DNA of 53,251 nt. Origin: Gekko japonicus (Eukaryota). The notes under the pieces are model-generated. The model had not been told where the DNA came from. It was given only the letters and a program-made list of their open reading frames with translations, and did not search any database. The DNA is taken from the NCBI RefSeq assembly GCF_001447785.1, contig NW_015167563.1, forward strand, positions 702,596 to 755,846. The letters run 5' to 3'. A program made the translations under genes and the position numbers. Positions 3,300 to 53,012 of the stretch are shown piece by piece. Every line of letters begins with the position of its first letter. The first letter of the stretch is position 1.

Positions 3300-4700
3300 T
3301 TATGTCTGGGAAACCCGTTCTCAGTTTCGCGGCCTCCAAGGTTTCTATTCTCCGCTCGCGGGAGTAGAGGAAGGCCTGTCAGCCAGCCCTTGGAGTAGAC
3401 GGGAGAGGCGGACAAAGAGCTCTTAAACAAATAAGAAATGCGCTTCTACATGAGTGACTGCTCCTGTCCTCCAATAAGCAGAAGGCTTGTTGCAGAGTGC
3501 CAGCGCGACCCCGAGGAGTCTATAAAAGGAGACCACGCGAGACCGCGCGTTCCCCGTTCGGATAGCGCTGTAGTGCAGCGTTTTTCTGTCTCTGAGGCAA
3601 AAACCGCGCGGGAGAGAAGGGAGGAGCGGCGACCGCTGACGACATCGAAGTGACGGGGAGCAGATCCGGACGGCGTCTTTGGAACAGGGTTCCGGCAGGC
3701 CTGGGATCGCAACCGCAGCGGAATTTAACGTGAGTACCGAAGGCTCTCGAGGGTCAACCCGTCTAGATTTCGGGGGGGAGGGGGAGGGGAGAAGAGGCTG
3801 TGAGGCGGGATGGGCCTACGGAGCGAGCGCGGAGGCGCCGTTCTTGCCGCCTCTTTCCTTCGTTAGGCCTCAGTGACGTGGGGGCTTCCGTTGTGTCCCG
3901 TACCCAGGTAGACACAGTCGCGGCGCGGTCTTCGAGCAGGCACGATGGCCGACGTGGAGCAACAGCTTGGCGCCACTCAGAACGGGCACGAAGCGGAAGC
4001 GGCCGAGGGCTCCGCTGGTGGCGGCGGCGACGAAGAGCAGCAGCAGCAGCACCAGGAGCAGATGGAGGAGGAGGAGGAGGAGGAAGAAGAGGTGGTGGCG
4101 GCGGCCGTGGCCGAGGAGGAGGAGGAAGAGGAGGAGGAGGCGGCCGAGGCAGGGGACGGAGGCGAGGAGGGGCAGTCGGCCGCCCCGGCGGAGGCGACCG
4201 GCAGCCAGAATGGAGCCGAGGGCGACCAGATCAACGCCAGCAAGAACGAGGAAGACGCGGGGTGAGTGCGAGCGGCCCTCCTTTCCCGGCGCCATGCGGG
4301 CGACCGACGTGCTGGCAGCGAAGGGGTAGTAGGCCCGAGGCCGCTTCCGCTCTGCAGCGCTGCAGGCTCCGACAAAGGGCGGTTGTGGCGCAGCTGCGTG
4401 GCGCGAATCGGCCCTGCTGGCGAGGCTGAAGCAGACAATGAGCGGGGCCTGGGCCGCCACTACGGCGGCGGGACCCCACCTCCTTTGTTCTGGAGCTGCC
4501 TTTTGTTGCCGCCATGTGGTGGTGGTGGGAGCGCGGGAGAGATCCTTTTTTTTTTTTTTGGCCTGAAGTGGGAGGATCCGCCCCCCTCCCTGTGTTCTGT
4601 TCGCGCTCAGTCACGGCTTAATCATCGATGCATTTTAGGTAACCTTGAAGAGAAGTGTTTTCTCCCCCATTACTTGGGCCGGTTTTCTCCCCCCCCCCTC
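3300..4700 (+). promoter_or_regulatory. CpG island / HNRNPAB promoter region
   Basis: GC- and CpG-rich stretch around the first coding exon. CCAAT at 3471, TATAAAAG at 3521-3528, and a candidate non-coding exon donor AAC|GTGAGT at 3729/3730. Confidence 0.75.
3945..4261 (+). CDS. HNRNPAB: HNRNPAB first coding exon (acidic low-complexity N-terminus)
   Basis: ATG at 3945; MADVEQQ...[14 protein letters not shown]; donor GTGAGT at 4262. Confidence 0.93.
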
Positions 4701-12569: not shown

Positions 12570-37036
<24,467 letters not shown>

Positions 37037-37719
37037 GGCTCCTCCGCCCGGGAAAGGAAGCCCGAGCGCGAGGAAAGAGGCGGAGTTGGCGCTTCCGTCG
37101 GTGCCGGGGCCCGCTGAGCTTCGGAGCGCGATGGCCTCCGAGGAGGAGGGGAGGGGGGCCTCCGGCAGCGCTTGTTTGAAGGGATGGTTTTTCAATGAGG
37201 AGGTCCCTGGTGTAAAGGCACCGAGCTTTCCTGCGGGGGCTGCCTGGCTCGCTGTCTAGTTGTCAGAGCGTAATGCAGCTTTAGATCCGGAAAGGCTGCG
37301 TGATGTACGGCTGTAAAAAGCACAGGCCGGGGGTGGGAGCGACAATAATGGTACTTGCTACCCTCCTCGATGTGTGTCTCCGGGGTTTCGCTCTTTGTCA
37401 GGCTGCTACATTTTTCAGAATGAAAACACGAAGCCTTTAACAGGTGCAGGTCTTCTCACATATTTTAGATGGGAAGATGCCAGTTTGGAGAACCGGCTTG
37501 GGTCTGGTCTGGCCCTGTAAACAGCCTGGGTGGGAAACCACATGGGAATCTTTTATGGAAGAGTTAGAAAGCAATATATTAATAATTGGATCTACGAAAG
37601 CAGGGATCCCCAAACCATTTTGAGCCTGTGGCACCTTTGGAATTCTGACAGAGTGGTGGGCTGCTGCAGAAAGCAAAGCCAACCATGAAGTCAGAGAGCA
37701 AGGTTCTATACTAACAGTA

Positions 37720-43300: not shown

Positions 43301-44698
43301 AGACATTTGGCTTTGATCCTAAAAAATACCTTAGATTGTATTAGCCACAGGGGCAGGTAAGATGAGACTAGATTTCATAAACAATGATCAAGACACACGT
43401 GATTTTTTTGAGTTCCCCCTTCCAATACCTGTTCTTGCAAAGCCAGCAAGTTAGTCTTTAAGCCCCTCCAAGTTAAGAGAAATTATTCAAAAATTTGGCA
43501 CAAGAAGTTTCTAAAGGGAAGATGAAAAAAATTAAAGAACAGCTGTCAGATTTTAGGGTGACAACGTCTGAGAAAAGGAACTCTCACAAAAATTCAAGAG
43601 CAGGTGCATCCCCCTGGCTACCATTGTGAAGAGTTACCACGTTCCTAGCATTTTCTATTTGATGCAGTGAATGTATGTATCTCACTGTTAACCTTACCCT
43701 AATCTGCTCCACAGCTTTCACACCACCATTAGCCCAAGACAGAGTGACACTGAATATTAAGTATAACAGTTCACACTGCAGACTGGAGAAAGGGAATTTG
43801 CTAGAAGAGTGGAGGAAGCAGTGTGCTGCAGAGAAAGACAAGTTGCTTTTACGATCTGTGGGCTAACAAGTTTTAGTGGTATCGTTCTTCCTAAGGTCTG
43901 TAAAAGAGTTACCTGTGCATTGACTTTCAAAGAAGCCTTGAAAGGTGGTCTCTTGTACTGGAAGTTAAAAGCATTTCCCTTGGCAAAATGTATTTAACTT
44001 GTCTTTCTGAACTCAGTGACATTCATCTTCATTTATACAACAGTTTAATATTATAAAGCAAAATAGTATCACATACACCTCAAAAGTAAAATAAAGTTAT
44101 CTTATATATAACTCAAATTGTTGACAAATGAAGCAATGCTAGCTTTATAATCTCAATTTTTCTTTGTGTAGCCTGCATCTTCTGCCATGAAGACTTGTAC
44201 AGATTAAAGCATTGATAGCAGTTTGTCTAGAAGGCTTTAACAAGCACTACTAATACAAATAAGTATATGTTATTGCTAAAGGATCACAAGACAGCAGTTC
44301 AGAACCCTCTTTGACCTACACTCAATGAAAGCACCATGTTATCCCTACAGAAATTAGCACTGGCCAGTAATGCAAACCAGCATTTTGGAATATGCTTAAA
44401 TCCACCTCTGGGGAAAAGAGTGTGTAAAACATAGCTAGGATGGAGCCAATTAGCACCAGTGGTTTTTCCTTCCAAACGTCTTAGGTTTTGTTCAAGCAGG
44501 AACAAGAAAGGGAAAGAAACTAAACCTAACAAAGAACTCCAAAACCAAGCAAAGGTTAGTGGAAAGGAGGGCCAAAATTAAAACCTTTTCATAAAAAGAG
44601 GTACATGTATTTATTGATAATATCAAATTAAAACATATATAGGGGCCCAATTACAACCAATATATATAAAACATAACCATAACCAGGGCTAAAAGAGT

Positions 44699-44741
44699 TG
44701 ACCTGACGCGTTTCGGCCGAATCGGCCTTCCTCAGAGGTCA
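44699..44741 (-). ncRNA. Type I hammerhead ribozyme (minimal, Penelope-type)
   Basis: Minus strand: UGACCU-CUGAGGA-A-GGCCG-AUU-CGGCC-GAAA-CGC-GUC/AGGUCA. Stem I is 6 bp, the CUGANGA and GAAA core boxes are intact, stem II is 5 bp, stem III is the palindrome ACGCGU, and the cleavage triplet is GUC. Confidence 0.85.
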
Positions 44742-45008
44742 TACAAATGTGGCTAGATGGTAAAAAGCTTTTTACTTGTGAATATTGTGGCAACACAATC
44801 AAAGAAGGTTATTTGTGGACCATAGGTGGATTTTATAATCACTGGGCTAGTGATTGCACTAAAAAGGTTTCATGTGCATATTTATCCTGTGCCTGGTTAC
44901 TTTACTTCTGAACAATTTACTTTATGGTCCTTATTGAATTTGTATTGTGTATATATTCCTGATTGTGTCTTTATGAATGTAACTATTTACCATTTAGCCA
45001 CATTTGTA

Positions 45009-45042
45009 TGACCTCTGAGGAAGGCCGAAACGCGTCAGGTCA
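45009..45042 (+). ncRNA. Hammerhead ribozyme copy with stem II deletion
   Basis: UGACCU-CUGAGGA-AGGCC-GAAA-CGC-GUC/AGGUCA. It lacks 9 nt of stem-loop II relative to the minus-strand copy. Confidence 0.65.
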
Positions 45043-47556
45043 ACTCTTTTAGCCCTGGTTATGGTTATGTTTTATATATATTGGTTGTAATTGGGCCCCT
45101 ATATATGTTTTAATTTGATATTATCAATAAATACATGTACCTCTTTTTATGAAAAGGTTTTAATTGTAGGTTTTGTTCAAACCATGTATATATTACCCAT
45201 TGGTTCTTGTAAATGTGGATATTTATCATAAAATTGCTAAAAGATCTTGGTTCAGCGGTCAAAGGGTACAAATGCTCCATGATACTGCAACATAAACTTT
45301 TTAGTTAGTTTTGCTCGGTCAGTTTTGCAGCTCCTGAACTGACTGACTGGTTGGCGGTTCCTAACTCAATGAGAGCTTTTAACAGCTGTAAGACAGAGAA
45401 CAGTTCAGAATATACAGCTACTTCTTTTGCAGTGATGCAATATGCAGTGCCAGCTGAATTTTTCCTTGTCCTGCAGGTGTTAAAAGCACTGGTTTACTTT
45501 GAAGCTAGATGTTAGCAATTTATCTTCCAGTAAAGCTTTCCTTTTCACTCTCATACAAGTAAGTTACTTTTAGCATGTTCTGTAGCATTTCTGTCATATG
45601 AGCTAGTGTACTATAGGGGTTAAGAGTGAACTAGGACTTGGGAGACCTAAACTGCATTGCCATTCAGCTGTGAATCTAACTTATTGACTTGGGACAGTCA
45701 CTCTTGATTTAAATGCATGGTTAAAATGCATGTGAGAAGAACTATGTACACTGCCCTGAGCCCCTCACAGGCAGAATAAACAAGTAACAGATATGACTGT
45801 TGGATGCTGGACCTCTCCTAAGGCATCCCAATCCTCATTCATATACATTCCTGTATACAGCTCAAATCATTATCCCCGTATCTCTACTTCTTGGGAAGTC
45901 AAGAAACATATTGGTTAACATGGTTTTGACAACAGAACACCTGTTAAGATTATGGCTCTTCCACATTTAATGGAAACTGAATAAATCGATACCAGAGTTT
46001 GAAGCCAGCATGGCGTTTTATGTCTGTTAGAAGAAATCAGTAAACATTGAGGCTGTATACCATAAATAGGGAAGTCAATTTGTCCTTGGAGTGTACAATA
46101 TTATATAGGTCCAGTCAATAATGAAAACAGGGCAATTGAAGTGAAATGAAATTGCCATGTCATTACAAATGAGGCTATTCAACAGATGCTGCTTATGAAT
46201 GTGCTTAAGTTCTTGGAATGAGTAAGATGGAACTCAATGATAGCCAGGCCAATAATGGCCCATATTCAGGACAATGTTTTAGTGTAACCACCCTGCCTTG
46301 TTCACACTCATAATCCATTGGAACGAGCTGCATTTTTGTGAGATGGTAGAGCAGTTCCATGATTTACACATTAATCATATTTGGACTGGACCAGATGTAT
46401 GTATGTGGGTGTTTAAAGATGGGTGCATGTTGTCATATTTTGCTGAAGGAACCACCATTGTATCATGGGTATATTGGCATAAAAATGCACCTTTGTTCTG
46501 GAGGTGGAACAGCAGTTTCCATGACCAATTGAATCACCAGTACTACTTAGTAAACTGCTAATTTTACCATCGGTAGCTCTACTTGGGGCATGCTTACAAA
46601 ATAAATTCAAATACTACTACTAAAACTATTTGAGGTATGAGTTTGGCTGTTACTATGGCAGTAGGGAAGAAAGGTAAAAATGGGAATCCAGCAAGCCTGG
46701 CACATTCAGGGAATGAAGTACTGTACTTCAAACACAAACCCCTTCCATGTTTGCAAACAGGAACTGTCAACTCATAGCCTGAAGAGCTTTAAGCAGAATT
46801 TGTGTTATGCCCTAATCTGTAAATGGAGATGAATATTACACAGTTTCCTTTGCTGGAAAAAGTTGTTTGGTAAGTGAGGCACTCCCAAGTTTTCCAACTC
46901 TGCGAGAGTTCTGCAAAAGAATCAGCATTTAGTGTCAGATTGCAGAAAGCTTGACTGAGCGTTTCCCCCTCCTAAAGAAAAGGTTTCTTCATAGGAGAAA
47001 CATCCACAGACAGTCGAGTCAATCATAGTGTGCCAAGTTGGAGGCATGTAGCAGCATGCATGGTTACACTTCTGTGATCTTTGCAGGCTGGAAACTCTTC
47101 CTGCACTCGTCCAGAGGCCAAGTTTGTCTCATTTCTAAGGCTGCGTCTTTTTTTTCTTTTTTGTTTTCTCCTCCTTTTGCATCTGCGTCTATGTGCAACA
47201 GAATCGCATCGTTGAAAGCCAAGATTAGAAAAGTCCCTTCTCCATGCAATAAGGCACACTAGGTAAATTTTCTCAGTGCTGTTAGTCCACACAGTAGCGT
47301 TAGCAGCGAACAACAATCATTCTCAACTACTTCAGCATGTCCAGTTATAAAACTCCAGATGGTGTGTATGCATGTCCTATGGGTCCTGGAAATGTTTATA
47401 TCTTAAAAATCCATACGGGACAGCGTCCAATATAAAAAAATCAATATATTACTGTTGAAGACTTATTGTTTTTCTGACTTTTCTCTTTTTTCGTATAAAA
47501 ATTAGAAAAGGTCAAAATATATCACACTATTATTTACAGAGTTCATGCTTGTAGGA

Positions 47557-49510
47557 TCACTGAAAAAGAACACAAACATGTTTTAAAATACAGGCACAGC
47601 ATGCATCTCATCCTCATATACTGTGAAACAGTTCTACTTTGTTAACATGCTTGCTATAACATCACCCTGAAATATTTACAGGTTTCACTAACAAAAGTCA
47701 GTAATATTTCCTGAACGTCTTCAAATTGGGATCATCGAACTAGGTGGTTTGTTTTAAATGGGGCTTTCAGAATCCTTCCATCAGCTGTCCTCTCTATGAG
47801 GTCTAGGTACACAACAATGCTCCCTCTAAGCTGTGGAATCTTGGGAGCAAAAATTCTACTTTGTGAACTACTGGCAAAGTCACAATACAAGAACTCGTGG
47901 GCACTCAATGAAATTGCTGAGCAGTCGGGTTAGAACAGATTAAAGGAAGCACTTCTTCACCCAAAGTGTGATTAATACATGAAATTCACCATCACAGGAG
48001 GTGGTGGCAGCCACAAGCATGGACAGCTTCAAGAGGGAATTAGATAAACATATGGAGCAGAGGTCCATCAGTGGCTATTATCCACAAGGTATAGATAGGA
48101 ACTCTCAGTCTGGGGCAAGTGATGCACTGTATTTCTTGGTGCTTGGGGGGGGCAACAGTGGGAGGGCTTCTACAGTCCTGGCCCCACTGATGGATCTCCT
48201 GATGGCACCTGGTATTTTTGGCCACTGTGTGACAGAGTGTTGGACTGGATGGGCCATTGGCCTGATCCAACATTGGCTTCTCTTATGTTCTTAAGTTGTG
48301 AGTGAGCAATTTGGCTACTGCATAAATTAGTTTGTTCTGGAGCCATCCTTCCTGATCTGAGAAAAAAATGTGTGAGCTGGAAGCTAAAAAAATGTGAGCT
48401 AGTTCACATTAGCTTAGAGGGAACACTGGTACACCACCACATCTCACTGTGTATTGCCCTTCTCAGTATATGTTGCCTTGACACCATCGTACTACAGGAC
48501 AGCTGCATAGACCTCTGCAGAACACCATGAATGAATGTACACAGAGGTCCAATCTTTAAGGAACAGGAGTTGGAAAAAGTGTGAACATTTCTCAGGCAAC
48601 GGGGCCATCTTTTCCTGATCTGCTGTGTTGAAATGCATGTGTCCCCTGCAATTCAAAGTGAGGGCAATCAGAGGTTTCATTTGCCCTCAAGTCACAAAGC
48701 TCAGTCTGATTGGTTATGTGGTATGATCCCAACTGGTTGGGATCTCACTGTTAAAAGCAAGCAAACCTGGCATTAGAAATGATTTATTCTTCAAATGTAT
48801 ATATTTAGTCCATTAGCAGTTTTAAGGGCACACATTGTTTTATTAATCTTTTTTATTTCCTGGTGTGTGTTATAAATTAAGAGTTTGTGTTTCTTTTTGT
48901 TCCTTTCCTGTTCCTGATATTTGGCACTTCCTGGGAAGTGTGCGTGCGTGTATGTATGTGTATATACACAGGAATATGACAGCAAACACAAAAAGGGATT
49001 AAAATGATAAATGGAGAGAGGGATTCTGCATCCCAAAAGTTCCCTTCCCCCCAAAGTTCCCCAGATGTTTAAAAAGGAAACATTTTCAGTGCTGAAGTCA
49101 CAATATCTGGCTGAATGTAAAGTAAGTGGGGATGGGGGGGGGGGAGCACAAAGCATCCAGAATTCCCTTCCTTCTGTTGCTTCTTTACTTGGAATCATTT
49201 TAACTTCTTTTCCTGCTGTGTGCAGCAGCCAGTGTTCAAAGATGTGGATCTGCTGCCATCTTGTGTTGGCCCATCCTAAGCTGTACTAACTTGAAATTTG
49301 TTGTAAAATCACAATAAAATACTAGAATATAAAGACCAGATGCAAATTCAGCATGAAAACTGAAGGAAAGCCAGATTTCTATGCTGTTATGTAGGAGAAC
49401 TGGGAGAGCACTGTTGTTATTCTTGCTGACCGAGGAACCAATATCAGCTTGAAAACAGCCAAAGTACATACCTTGTGCCAACATCCTGGTACTGGTAATC
49501 CATCTGGTCC
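47557..49510 (-). CDS. COL23A1: Collagen alpha-1(XXIII) chain, C-terminal exons only (gene continues beyond the window)
   Basis: 39-nt exon 49510-49472 (ttgtag / gtatgt) encodes GPDGLPVPGCWHK, the C-terminus typical of membrane collagens XIII/XXIII/XXV. The next exon starts with TGA at 47559-47557 after tctttttcag. Position upstream of PHYKPL supports COL23A1. Confidence 0.88.
47815..48428. mobile_element. hAT-like MITE with nested CR1 fragment
   Basis: 18-bp imperfect TIRs caatgctccctctaagct / agcttagagggaacactg and an 8-bp TSD gtacacaa / gtacacca. A related TIR starts at 53223. Confidence 0.72.
47877..48293 (+). mobile_element. CR1 LINE 3' fragment
   Basis: EVVAATSMDSFKRELDKHME peptide and a ttatgttctta tail. 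Homologous to 30669-31211. Confidence 0.85.
49472..49510 (-). CDS. COL23A1: COL23A1 penultimate exon
   Basis: GGA CCA GAT GGA TTA CCA GTA CCA GGA TGT TGG CAC AAG flanked by AG and GT. Confidence 0.9.
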
Positions 49511-52067: not shown

Positions 52068-52835
52068 AGAACCGAGGGAAGGGGAAAATCTATTGGCCAC
52101 CAGAAGTTTATCGGCATTGTCAAGAGCAGCCTTCAGTCTTTTGCTATTAACGTTCCATTTCTTTCTTTTTTTAAAGTATGTAATTGTTTCACATTCAGGC
52201 AATTTAACTATTCAGGAAACTGAAATGGTTCCAAAATGTAAAATTGCCAAATGGAAAAAGGGCAGGCCCGCAATTTAATAGACGTCTTATTTTTCCAAAG
52301 CTCAGACTGAGCTAGCTAACAGCTAAGCATGGTGTTCAATGCAAAGCAACTGTCCCAGGTGCAGAATTAAAGTGGTGGGTGGTGTTTCCCTCCCCCCTCG
52401 CACACTACATTGAGAGACTCGCTGAGAGTGAAGGTGCCAGAATGGGACATGCAGGCAGCCAGTGTATGGGCAGAGAGGAGGAGTTGGAAGGGGGATCCCC
52501 ACCGCCAGTGCACTACCAGAGTTTTCCCAGGCCAGTGGAATACACGGCCCAAAGAGGTGAGTACCACGTGTGCTGCTGCAGTAGTCTGGGGCAATCACGT
52601 GGGCTCCAGGCTCCCTGGCCCCTCCCACCAGGTGACAGATCCTGGGGGTGGCTCCTCCAAAGTTTGACTGGTCAGAAAGCAAAAGGGGAGTTGAGCGAGG
52701 CCAATTGGGAATGTGAGTGGGCAGCATCTCCTGGGTTCATCCATGACTTGGGGCAACGGAGGGGTGCTGGGGCACTGGGCGGTGTGGGCAGGAATGGAGG
52801 CATTGTGCAGTTCAATAAAATAACATTTTTTTGCT

Positions 52836-53012
52836 CTGACCTGGATAGCCCAGGCAAGCCTGATCTTGTCAGATCTTGGAAGCTAAGCAGGACCAACCCT
52901 GGCAAGTACTTGGATGGGAGACCTCCAAGGAATACCAGGGCTCTGAAATGTCCAAGCCCCACTAAGGGTCACCAGAAGTCAACCATGACTTCCAGGCACA
53001 CACACACACACA
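52836..53012 (+). mobile_element. 5S rRNA-derived SINE (copy 3)
   Basis: gatcttgtcagatcttggaagctaagcagg...agtacttggatgggagacctccaaggaatacc is 5S-like; it ends in (CA)n. Confidence 0.72.

What the first reader, a model, noticed from the sequence alone, without database searches (positions are those of the whole stretch)
44699..44741. Complete hammerhead ribozyme on the COL23A1/PHYKPL sense strand, about 2.8 kb past the COL23A1 stop codon
Seen: the minus strand reads UGACCU CUGAGGA A GGCCG-AUU-CGGCC GAAA CGC GUC/AGGUCA, with all catalytic core nucleotides, a 6-bp stem I, a 5-bp stem II and predicted cleavage between 44705 and 44704. Known: Penelope-like retroelements carry minimal type I hammerheads whose palindromic stem III (here ACGCGU) favours cleavage as a dimer. 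Inference: it is co-directional with COL23A1. Between the stop (47557) and the element I saw only an ATTAAA (45966-45971) and no AATAAA, so long-3'UTR or read-through transcripts could contain a self-cleaving site. That site might shape COL23A1 3' ends or limit read-through into the PHYKPL promoter.
Basis: partly seen in the sequence, partly recalled or inferred. Interest (0 to 1): 0.8.

Follow-up and report, generated by a model that had tools for sequence, protein, structure and literature searches.

The report
Retrotransposon hammerhead motif in 3' UTR
The hammerhead ribozyme motif is really there, but it is the standard small ribozyme carried by a Penelope-like jumping gene that landed as a fold-back insertion in the long 3' untranslated region of a collagen gene, where it is most likely locked in a long hairpin and silent.

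Summary
The minus strand at 44741->44699 reads a complete minimal type I hammerhead. It has a 6-bp stem I, a 5-bp stem II, every core nucleotide, a palindromic ACGCGU helix III and a cut site between 44705 and 44704. Shuffled sequence gave no such motif.

It is not free-standing. It lies in one arm of a 671-bp insertion (44496-45166) flanked by a perfect 14-bp target-site duplication. The two arms are inverted and near-identical, with their 3' ends pointing outward, and an extra tail sits at one end only. This is the published layout of truncated Penelope-like element (PLE) insertions. The copy in the other arm lacks stem II.

The motif meets the published PLE min-hammerhead criteria. No Rfam hammerhead model scores it.

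A spliced RNA contig shows a minus-strand terminal exon starting at 47559 with TGA. Transcribed sequence of similar depth lies on both sides of the insertion, so long 3' UTR isoforms probably contain the motif in sense.

Cleavage is unlikely. Only one sense copy is present, published PLE hammerheads are inactive as monomers, and the hammerhead fold costs about 56 kcal/mol against the ~190-bp fold-back. No read ends pile up at the cut site.

The scan has noted many similar PLE hammerheads elsewhere in this genome, including fold-back pairs. This is an ordinary new member of a known kind.

The parts
44699..44741 (-). Complete minimal type I hammerhead motif. Predicted cut after C17, between 44705 and 44704.
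   Evidence: Sequence read; descriptor scan gives 1 hit against 0 in 300 shuffles; local fold -17.2 kcal/mol with stems I and II.
45009..45042 (+). Second hammerhead copy in the opposite arm. It lacks 9 nt of stem II (only GGCC is left), so no helix II can form.
   Evidence: comparison of the two arms.
44576..44767 (-). Arm 1 of the inverted repeat (PLE 3' region holding the intact hammerhead and an AATAAA).
   Evidence: the repeat finder I1 (143 nt, 100%) and I2 (46 nt, 96%).
44983..45165 (+). Arm 2 of the inverted repeat. In a minus-strand transcript it is the antisense of arm 1 and is transcribed first.
   Evidence: whole-element fold.
44768..44982 (.). 215-nt unique centre between the arms (the loop of the fold-back). 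It is the extra 5' sequence of one of the two truncated copies.
44496..44575 (-). [quoted passage not shown] It is multi-copy in RNA data.
   Evidence: Sequence; raised depth and paralogue variants at 44506-44562; tail concept from PMC8557442 and PMC11167929.
44482..44495 (+). Left target-site duplication, TAGGTTTTGTTCAA.
45167..45180 (+). Right target-site duplication, TAGGTTTTGTTCAA.
44610..44615 (-). AATAAA brought in by the insertion, about 90 nt downstream of the hammerhead cut site on the gene's sense strand.
47557..47559 (-). TGA stop codon at the first three bases of the terminal exon. The acceptor AG is at 47561-47560.
   Evidence: Sequence. The X1 contig of 2917 nt matches 45162-47561 and then leaves the genome for 517 nt; the intron contig has depth 2 against 109.
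45966..45971 (-). ATTAAA, the only poly(A) signal between the stop codon and the insertion's upstream edge. Coverage in run X21 falls just downstream of it.

Best explanation
The motif is the minimal type I hammerhead that Penelope-like retroelements (PLEs) carry in their terminal repeats. It arrived with a young, heavily 5'-truncated PLE insertion (44496-45166).

The insertion consists of two copies of the element's 3' region in head-to-head orientation, with their 3' ends facing the two 14-bp target-site duplications. The likely mechanism (inferred) is that both nicked target strands primed reverse transcription of element RNA and the two cDNAs met in the middle. One copy started at the more distal start site and kept the tail.

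Long isoforms therefore carry the motif in sense.

In those transcripts the antisense arm is made first, and it pairs with the hammerhead arm into a ~190-bp duplex. No second sense copy is present to build the dimeric helix III. The motif is therefore most probably catalytically silent here, a passenger of the transposon and not a host 3'-end device.

Shown: the motif, the insertion anatomy, the spliced terminal exon, transcription on both sides and the fold energetics. Inferred: the insertion mechanism, continuity of single transcripts through the element and the lack of cleavage.
For: - Motif and core.
- It meets the features that Cervera & De la Pena list for PLE min-hammerheads: an unpaired nucleotide between 9 and 10.1, a G10.1-C11.1 pair, and palindromic 15.2-16.2.
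- Insertion anatomy: a perfect 14-bp TSD, arms 100% identical over 143 nt and 96% over 46 nt, and a tail at one end. This matches the described PLE insertion structure of 5' truncation, an adjacent inverted truncated copy, a tail at one end and a variable TSD. Pairs of min-hammerheads 100-700 bp apart on opposite strands are also described.
- The Anolis PLE protein cleaves and extends both target strands and has two reverse-transcription start sites that define the tail.
- The family is multi-copy and transcribed: depth is 160-524 over the element against 82-110 in the flanks, with paralogue variants.
- Transcription context: a spliced contig covers 47561-45162 (depth 109), and colinear contigs cover 44536-42106 (depth 82) and 42104 to about 40312 (depth 93). 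The intron has depth 2.
- Silence: the whole-element MFE is -380 kcal/mol as a fold-back. The enforced hammerhead fold gives -324.4, a cost of +55.6, and stem I pair probabilities are about 1e-34.
- Published activity: monomeric min-hammerheads show no detectable cleavage and dimers show low cleavage. The Anolis PAc hammerhead is inactive without PLE protein, and no RNA-seq ends are seen at its cut site.
- Reads: about 18 reads cover 44706 in X20, and no pile of starts or ends is reported at 44704/44705 in any run.
Against: - No reverse-transcriptase or GIY-YIG coding sequence lies in or next to the insertion. The PLE assignment therefore rests on the motif type and the insertion anatomy, not on homology to a named element.
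- The tail is 80 nt, longer than the published 30-40 nt.
- No Rfam hammerhead model reports the motif.
- The RNA evidence is weak on the key point. The raw-read libraries look unstranded and shallow. Reads over the element come largely from paralogues. No contig bridges the element. Standard RNA-seq captures 5'-OH and 2',3'-cyclic-phosphate ends poorly.
- Equilibrium folding does not exclude kinetic, protein-assisted or trans-dimer cleavage of a small fraction of molecules.
Confidence: 0.8

Rival explanations
1. The hammerhead self-cleaves long-3'-UTR or read-through COL23A1 transcripts, as a dimer with another molecule. It thereby shapes COL23A1 3' ends or insulates the PHYKPL promoter.
For: The motif is core-complete and in sense. 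Transcripts reach and probably cross it. Many transcribed copies of the same family could act as trans-dimer partners through the ACGCGU palindrome, which forms a 6-bp helix of about -7.5 kcal/mol. PLE protein can activate such a ribozyme in vitro.
Against: The antisense arm in the same transcript sequesters the motif at a cost of +55.6 kcal/mol. Monomers are inactive and dimers weak in vitro. No read-end pile is seen at the site, and contig depth is similar upstream (109) and downstream (82-93). The likely PHYKPL promoter CpG island is about 7.5 kb further on, at 36.5-37.5 kb, with AATAAA signals in between. The perfect TSD and identical arms mark a recent insertion, so there is no sign of host selection.
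Confidence: 0.05
2. What matters to the host is not the ribozyme but the insertion's other features. One is a ~190-bp perfect RNA hairpin in the 3' UTR, a possible substrate for ADAR editing or for Staufen- or Dicer-type recognition. The other is a new AATAAA at 44615-44610 that could create an alternative poly(A) site.
For: The fold-back has an MFE of -380 kcal/mol. An AATAAA lies on the sense strand inside the element. Contig depth drops slightly, from 109 to 82, across the element. A>G and T>C mismatches occur in the arms, for example at 44706, 44721, 44747, 45004, 45005 and 45007.
Against: The mismatches sit among G>A, C>T and transversion differences that point to paralogue reads, so editing is not shown. 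Contig depths are flat averages. No poly(A)-bearing loose ends were reported near 44590.
Confidence: 0.12
3. The element is an animal retrozyme: a tandem hammerhead repeat that is cut out and circularised into a small circRNA.
For: Type I hammerheads with a short palindromic helix III are also typical of animal retrozymes, which derive from PLE terminal repeats.
Against: There are no direct tandem units, only two inverted copies, one of them broken. A single intact ribozyme cannot release a unit-length RNA. No back-joints were reported.
Confidence: 0.02
4. The motif is a chance match with no biological origin as a ribozyme.
For: No Rfam hammerhead family reports it, even at E<=10 on a 101-nt stretch.
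Against: Shuffles gave no hits. A second copy lies in the other arm of a TSD-flanked insertion. All four non-descriptor features of PLE min-hammerheads are present.
Confidence: 0.01

Closest known systems
Minimal hammerheads (min-HHRs) of metazoan Penelope-like elements (Cervera & De la Pena 2014, PMC4209133; dimer cleavage per Lunse et al. 2017 as summarised in PMC6765202)
   Same: Type I topology and a complete core. One unpaired nucleotide between A9 and G10.1, and a G10.1-C11.1 pair. Helix III is reduced to a palindrome (ACGCGU) that can only form between two copies. A second copy lies a few hundred bp away on the opposite strand within a truncated element. Reptile genomes are among the hosts.
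   Different: Helix II is 5 bp (the Schistosoma families have 7-8) and helix I is 6 bp (4-5 there). No PLE ORF is attached, so the parent family (Poseidon, Neptune or other) is not identified. Activity is untested.
Poseidon PLE of Anolis carolinensis (PAc; PMC11167929)
   Same: A lizard PLE with a hammerhead in its terminal repeat. Insertions have tails defined by two reverse-transcription start sites. The protein nicks and extends both target strands. The hammerhead is inactive without the element's protein, and RNA-seq shows no ends at its cut site.
   Different: In PAc the ORF start codon lies at the start of stem II. This motif has no ATG there and is followed by about 200 nt of non-coding 3' sequence. 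I made no sequence comparison with PAc because no PAc sequence was at hand.
Animal non-LTR retrozymes (PMC7229834; bioRxiv 10.64898/2026.07.22.740005)
   Same: PLE-derived, non-autonomous, hammerhead-bearing repeats. When they overlap exons they are mostly in 3' UTRs.
   Different: Retrozymes are direct tandem repeats that give circRNAs. Here the two copies are inverted and only one is intact.
Host-gene hammerheads with proposed regulatory roles (rodent CLEC2 3' UTR discontinuous hammerhead; amniote intronic HH9/HH10). From my own knowledge and the citations in PMC4209133.
   Same: A hammerhead in sense orientation within a host transcription unit, in one case in a 3' UTR.
   Different: Those are stable monomers with loop-loop tertiary contacts, and they are conserved at orthologous loci. 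This one is a dimer-type minimal motif inside a young transposon insertion, with no evidence of conservation.

Membership tests
Hammerhead ribozyme, type I | Conserved core C3-U4-G5-A6-N7-G8-A9, G12-A13-A14, the A15.1-U16.1 pair and H17 at the cut site | tested here: met
   CUGAGGA / GAA / A...U / C read directly. The descriptor scan finds it.
Hammerhead ribozyme, type I | Three helices around the core, with the open end in helix I | tested here: inconclusive
   Helices I (6 bp) and II (5 bp) fold. Helix III cannot close as a monomer because A-U and C-G would enclose only 2 nt. It forms only as an intermolecular 6-bp ACGCGU duplex.
Hammerhead ribozyme, type I | Match to the Rfam hammerhead covariance models (for example RF00163) | tested here: not met
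   No hammerhead family was reported at gathering score, at E<=10 on 801 nt or at E<=10 on 101 nt. These models expect a real helix III and loops.
Hammerhead ribozyme, type I | Site-specific self-cleavage | not testable with these tools
   This needs in vitro transcription or end-specific RNA sequencing. RNA-seq gave no end pile at 44704/44705, which is only weak evidence.
PLE minimal hammerhead (min-HHR) | [quoted passage not shown] | tested here: met
   An extra A follows CUGAGGA. Criterion from PMC4209133.
PLE minimal hammerhead (min-HHR) | Conserved G10.1-C11.1 pair | tested here: met
   GGCCG...CGGCC directly flanks the core.
PLE minimal hammerhead (min-HHR) | Palindromic positions 15.2-16.2 / loop 3 | tested here: met
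   CGCG lies within ACGCGU.
PLE minimal hammerhead (min-HHR) | Location in a PLE terminal repeat or a truncated PLE insertion | tested here: inconclusive
   The PLE-type insertion anatomy is present: TSD, inverted truncated copies and a one-sided tail. No RT/GIY-YIG sequence lies in the insertion, and there was no reference PLE to align to.
Animal non-LTR retrozyme | Direct tandem repeats, each with a hammerhead, able to release unit-length (circular) RNA | tested here: not met
   Only inverted copies are present, one of them defective. No back-joints were reported.
Host-exapted regulatory hammerhead (CLEC2 / HH9 type) | A stable monomeric fold in its native transcript | tested here: not met
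   In the native transcript the motif is paired to the antisense arm. The hammerhead fold costs +55.6 kcal/mol.
Host-exapted regulatory hammerhead (CLEC2 / HH9 type) | Conservation at the orthologous locus in other species | not testable with these tools
   No other vertebrate genomes were available. The perfect TSD and the 100% identical arms argue for a recent insertion.

The most novel reading that the evidence does not exclude
A fraction of long COL23A1 3' UTR transcripts is cut at 44705/44704. This could happen if the hammerhead folds co-transcriptionally or with help (a PLE-encoded protein or an RNA chaperone) and dimerises in trans with abundant transcripts of the same PLE family. Transposon activity would then be coupled to the 3'-end processing and stability of a host collagen mRNA.
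Probability: 0.04. Interest if true: 0.6.

Novelty: new member of a known kind. Interest (0 to 1): 0.2.

Why it matters
As it stands, this is one more copy of a known transposon-borne ribozyme in a genome that holds many. Its main use is for annotation. The site should be labelled as a truncated fold-back PLE insertion with one intact and one broken min-hammerhead, lying inside an expressed long 3' UTR.

It would matter only if cleavage in vivo were shown. That would be a case of a transposon ribozyme acting on a host mRNA. The locus offers a natural test bed, with a sense ribozyme, a built-in antisense competitor and a probably polymorphic young insertion. Nothing seen here suggests the test would be positive.

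Tried and rejected
- Rfam scans at three stringencies gave no hammerhead hit. The only local hit, MIR8562 at 32.8 bits against a gathering score of 211, is an artefact of the long inverted repeat.
- I scanned the window for further hammerheads. The only other hit, at 36536-36495, has no stem II and I rejected it.
- I searched for collagen Gly-X-Y exons to verify COL23A1 and found none. Only the stop-codon exon of that gene is in the window, so the gene name stays unverified. I translated the 30-letter loose end of the spliced contig by hand only (Gly/Pro-rich, ending just before TGA).
- A metagenome pattern scan gave 8 loci with the same core pattern. Six have a complementary stem I of 4-6 bp with different sequences. 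At least L002 and L004 look like dense-ORF bacterial contigs, so they say nothing about the PLE family. I dropped this line.
- The search of earlier findings by sequence came back blank.
- Lunse et al. 2017 (PMC5785218) is not held. I cite it only through the review PMC6765202.
- I considered reading the A>G / T>C mismatches in the arms as ADAR editing. I rejected this as unproven because paralogue reads and reads exchangeable between the two identical arms explain them.
- A cofold of two 43-nt motifs gave an extended duplex through the stem II palindrome, not the double-hammerhead. Dot-bracket energy evaluation cannot represent the true double-hammerhead because helix III crosses helix I, so I evaluated only the 6-bp helix.

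Full report
**1. Observation**

Read on the minus strand, 44741->44699 is UGACCU-CUGAGGA-A-GGCCG-AUU-CGGCC-GAAA-CGCG-UC|AGGUCA.
- Every invariant hammerhead position is present: C3 U4 G5 A6 N7 G8 A9, G12 A13 A14, A15.1, U16.1 and H17=C.
- Stem I is 6 bp. It can extend by 2 bp past an A.A mismatch.
- Stem II is 5 bp, starting with G10.1-C11.1.
- The 15.1-16.1 segment ACGCGU is a perfect palindrome.
- One extra A lies between A9 and G10.1.

The specific pattern occurs twice in the window against 0.00 expected. A relaxed minimal-hammerhead descriptor finds only this site, and none in 300 dinucleotide-preserving shuffles.

**2. What surrounds it**

The second pattern hit is on the + strand at 45009-45042. 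It is the same motif with 9 nt of stem II missing, so helix II cannot form.

The two motifs lie in the arms of an inverted repeat. Arms 44576-44718 and 45023-45165 are 143 nt and 100% complementary. Arms 44722-44767 and 44983-45028 are 46 nt and 96% complementary. A unique 215-nt centre separates them.

Outside the left arm are a further 80 nt (44496-44575). The whole 671-bp block (44496-45166) is then bracketed by a perfect 14-bp direct repeat, TAGGTTTTGTTCAA, at 44482-44495 and 45167-45180.

Each arm points its 3' end outward towards a target-site duplication. Each carries a poly(A) signal on its own strand: AATAAA on the minus strand at 44615-44610 for the left arm.

The literature describes exactly this insertion structure for Penelope-like elements (PMC8557442):
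- strong 5' truncation;
- an adjacent inverted truncated copy that gives inverted repeats;
- a tail extension at only one end;
- target-site duplications of variable length.

Cervera & De la Pena also report pairs of min-hammerheads 100-700 bp apart on opposite strands as remnants of truncated PLEs.

A purified Anolis PLE protein cleaves and extends both strands of its target. It starts reverse transcription at two adjacent internal sites that define the tail (PMC11167929). This gives a simple mechanism for a head-to-head pair with 3' ends outward and a tail on one side. That mechanism is my inference for this copy.

The perfect duplication and the identical arms indicate a young insertion.

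**3. Family assignment**

Cervera & De la Pena list four features that were not part of their search descriptor and that recur in PLE min-hammerheads:
- families with covariation;
- a nucleotide between 9 and 10.1;
- a conserved G10.1-C11.1 pair;
- palindromic 15.2-16.2.

The last three can be tested on one copy, and all three are met. The first needs other genomic copies, which I could not fetch.

Rfam's hammerhead models do not report the motif at any threshold tried. This is expected for a motif without a real helix III, but it is recorded as a failed membership test for those models.

The insertion holds no RT or GIY-YIG coding sequence, so the parent PLE clade is unknown.

RNA data show that the element is multi-copy and transcribed somewhere in the genome. 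Depth is 160-524 over it against 82-110 in the flanks, with many paralogue-type variants.

**4. Gene context**

One contig of run X1 (2917 nt, depth 109) matches 45162-47561 and then continues for 517 nt that are not in the neighbouring genome. The break lies at the AG of a polypyrimidine-AG acceptor. A contig from the intron has depth 2.

X1 therefore holds spliced RNA. A minus-strand terminal exon starts at 47559, and its first codon is TGA. Read by hand, the unmatched end encodes a Gly/Pro-rich peptide running straight into that stop. This fits a collagen, but the name COL23A1 could not be verified, because no Gly-X-Y exon lies in the window.

The downstream gene is a class-III aminotransferase on the minus strand. 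Pfam Aminotran_3 hits occur in profile order from 25.9 to 15.3 kb, consistent with PHYKPL. A CpG island at 36.5-37.5 kb is its likely promoter.

ATTAAA at 45971-45966 is the only signal between the stop codon and the insertion's upstream edge.

Colinear X1 contigs of similar depth cover 44536-42106 (depth 82) and 42104 to about 40312 (depth 93). The latter ends near AATAAA at 40370-40365. The simplest reading is a 3' UTR of up to about 7 kb that runs through the insertion.

No contig bridges the repeat, so continuity of single molecules is inferred. In run X21, coverage falls just downstream of ATTAAA at 45971-45966. This suggests a shorter isoform in that sample.

The three raw-read RNA runs look unstranded and shallow. 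Depth is about 1-10 (summed over both mate orientations) over most of the stretch, rising to about 16 in places in X20 and X21.

**5. Does it cleave here?**

The evidence says probably not.
- (a) Helix III cannot close in a monomer, and the transcript has only one sense copy.
- (b) The transcript's other copy is antisense and is transcribed first. The minus-strand transcript folds into a ~190-bp near-perfect hairpin (MFE -380 kcal/mol). Enforcing the hammerhead stems raises the energy by 55.6 kcal/mol. Stem I pairs have probabilities of about 1e-34 in the ensemble. Without the upstream arm, the local hammerhead stems do form.
- (c) Published min-hammerheads show no monomer activity and only weak dimer activity. 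The lizard PAc hammerhead is inactive without the element's protein, and its authors found no RNA-seq ends at the cut site.
- (d) About 18 reads cover 44706, one base from the cut, in X20. No accumulation of read starts or ends is reported at 44704/44705 in any run. Contig depth upstream and downstream of the element is similar.

Point (d) is weak. The reads are largely from paralogues, and standard libraries under-sample 5'-OH and cyclic-phosphate ends.

**6. Comparison and novelty**

This is a new copy of a known kind: a PLE min-hammerhead within a truncated fold-back PLE insertion. HHR-bearing PLE derivatives that overlap exons have been noted mostly in 3' UTRs in Xenopus.

The scan's own notes, which are unchecked AI notes, list 158 hammerhead findings in this genome. 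They include fold-back pairs with one intact motif, and sense-oriented motifs just downstream of the NDUFAF6 stop codon and in a CAND2 intron. A first-stage note on this window also describes the same insertion (44482-45180) as a Penelope-like inverted repeat, and I confirm that.

**7. Verdict**

The origin and orientation parts of the interpretation are supported. The proposed host function is unsupported and is disfavoured by the anatomy. Interest is low (0.2). The residual novel possibility is protein-assisted or trans-dimer cleavage of the host mRNA, at about 4%.

The N run at 19956-20089 was left untouched.

Noticed in passing
window 52835-52947 (+): 5S rRNA-like sequence, Rfam RF00001 at 40.7 bits (gathering score 38), with several broken pairs in helix I. 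It is probably a 5S pseudogene or a 5S-derived SINE head.
   Followed up: no
window 47815-47876: A 62-nt segment in the last intron has RNA depth hundreds of times that of its neighbours (X1 about 53,000; X20 about 50 per orientation). Reads run off both edges into other sequence, with a consistent continuation to the right of 47876. It looks like a fragment of a very abundant transcribed repeat or small RNA.
   Followed up: partly
window 47557-47561 (-): The terminal exon of the upstream gene begins exactly with its stop codon (acceptor AG at 47561-47560, TGA at 47559-47557), so the last exon is entirely 3' UTR apart from the stop.
   Followed up: partly
window 45940-45971 (-): In RNA run X21, depth falls from about 16 (summed over both mate orientations; 46137-46333) to about 2 (45743-45939), just downstream of ATTAAA at 45971-45966. 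This suggests a proximal poly(A) site. Other runs keep coverage for kilobases beyond it.
   Followed up: no
window 44609-45108: RNA reads over the two arms show A>G in the left arm (44609, 44706, 44721, 44747) and clustered T>C in the right arm (44994, 45004, 45005, 45007, 45108). This could be A-to-I editing of the hairpin, paralogue differences, or reads swapped between the identical arms. It is unresolved.
   Followed up: partly
window 44728-45022 (+): An Rfam MIR8562 'hit' (32.8 bits against gathering score 211) is only the long inverted repeat being read as a miRNA-precursor hairpin.
   Followed up: yes
L002:6218-6247, L003, L005, L004:4582-4611, L007:793-823, L008:3847-3878: Metagenome contigs carry the same core pattern (CUGANGA-N-GGCC..GGCC-GAAACGCGUC) with 4-6 bp of complementary but different stem I sequences. 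L002 and L004 have dense long ORFs like bacterial contigs, and the L002 motif lies between two ORFs. These may be dimer-type minimal hammerheads outside animals.
   Followed up: partly
window 26890-29794 (-): Long stop-free minus-strand segments with reverse-transcriptase-like sequence lie inside the aminotransferase gene's intron. This is a LINE-type insertion, not a PLE.
   Followed up: no
window 3501-4500 and 36501-37500: There are two CpG islands. The one at 3.5-4.5 kb overlaps a + strand Gly/Arg-rich open frame. The one at 36.5-37.5 kb is the likely promoter of the minus-strand aminotransferase (PHYKPL-type) gene.
   Followed up: no
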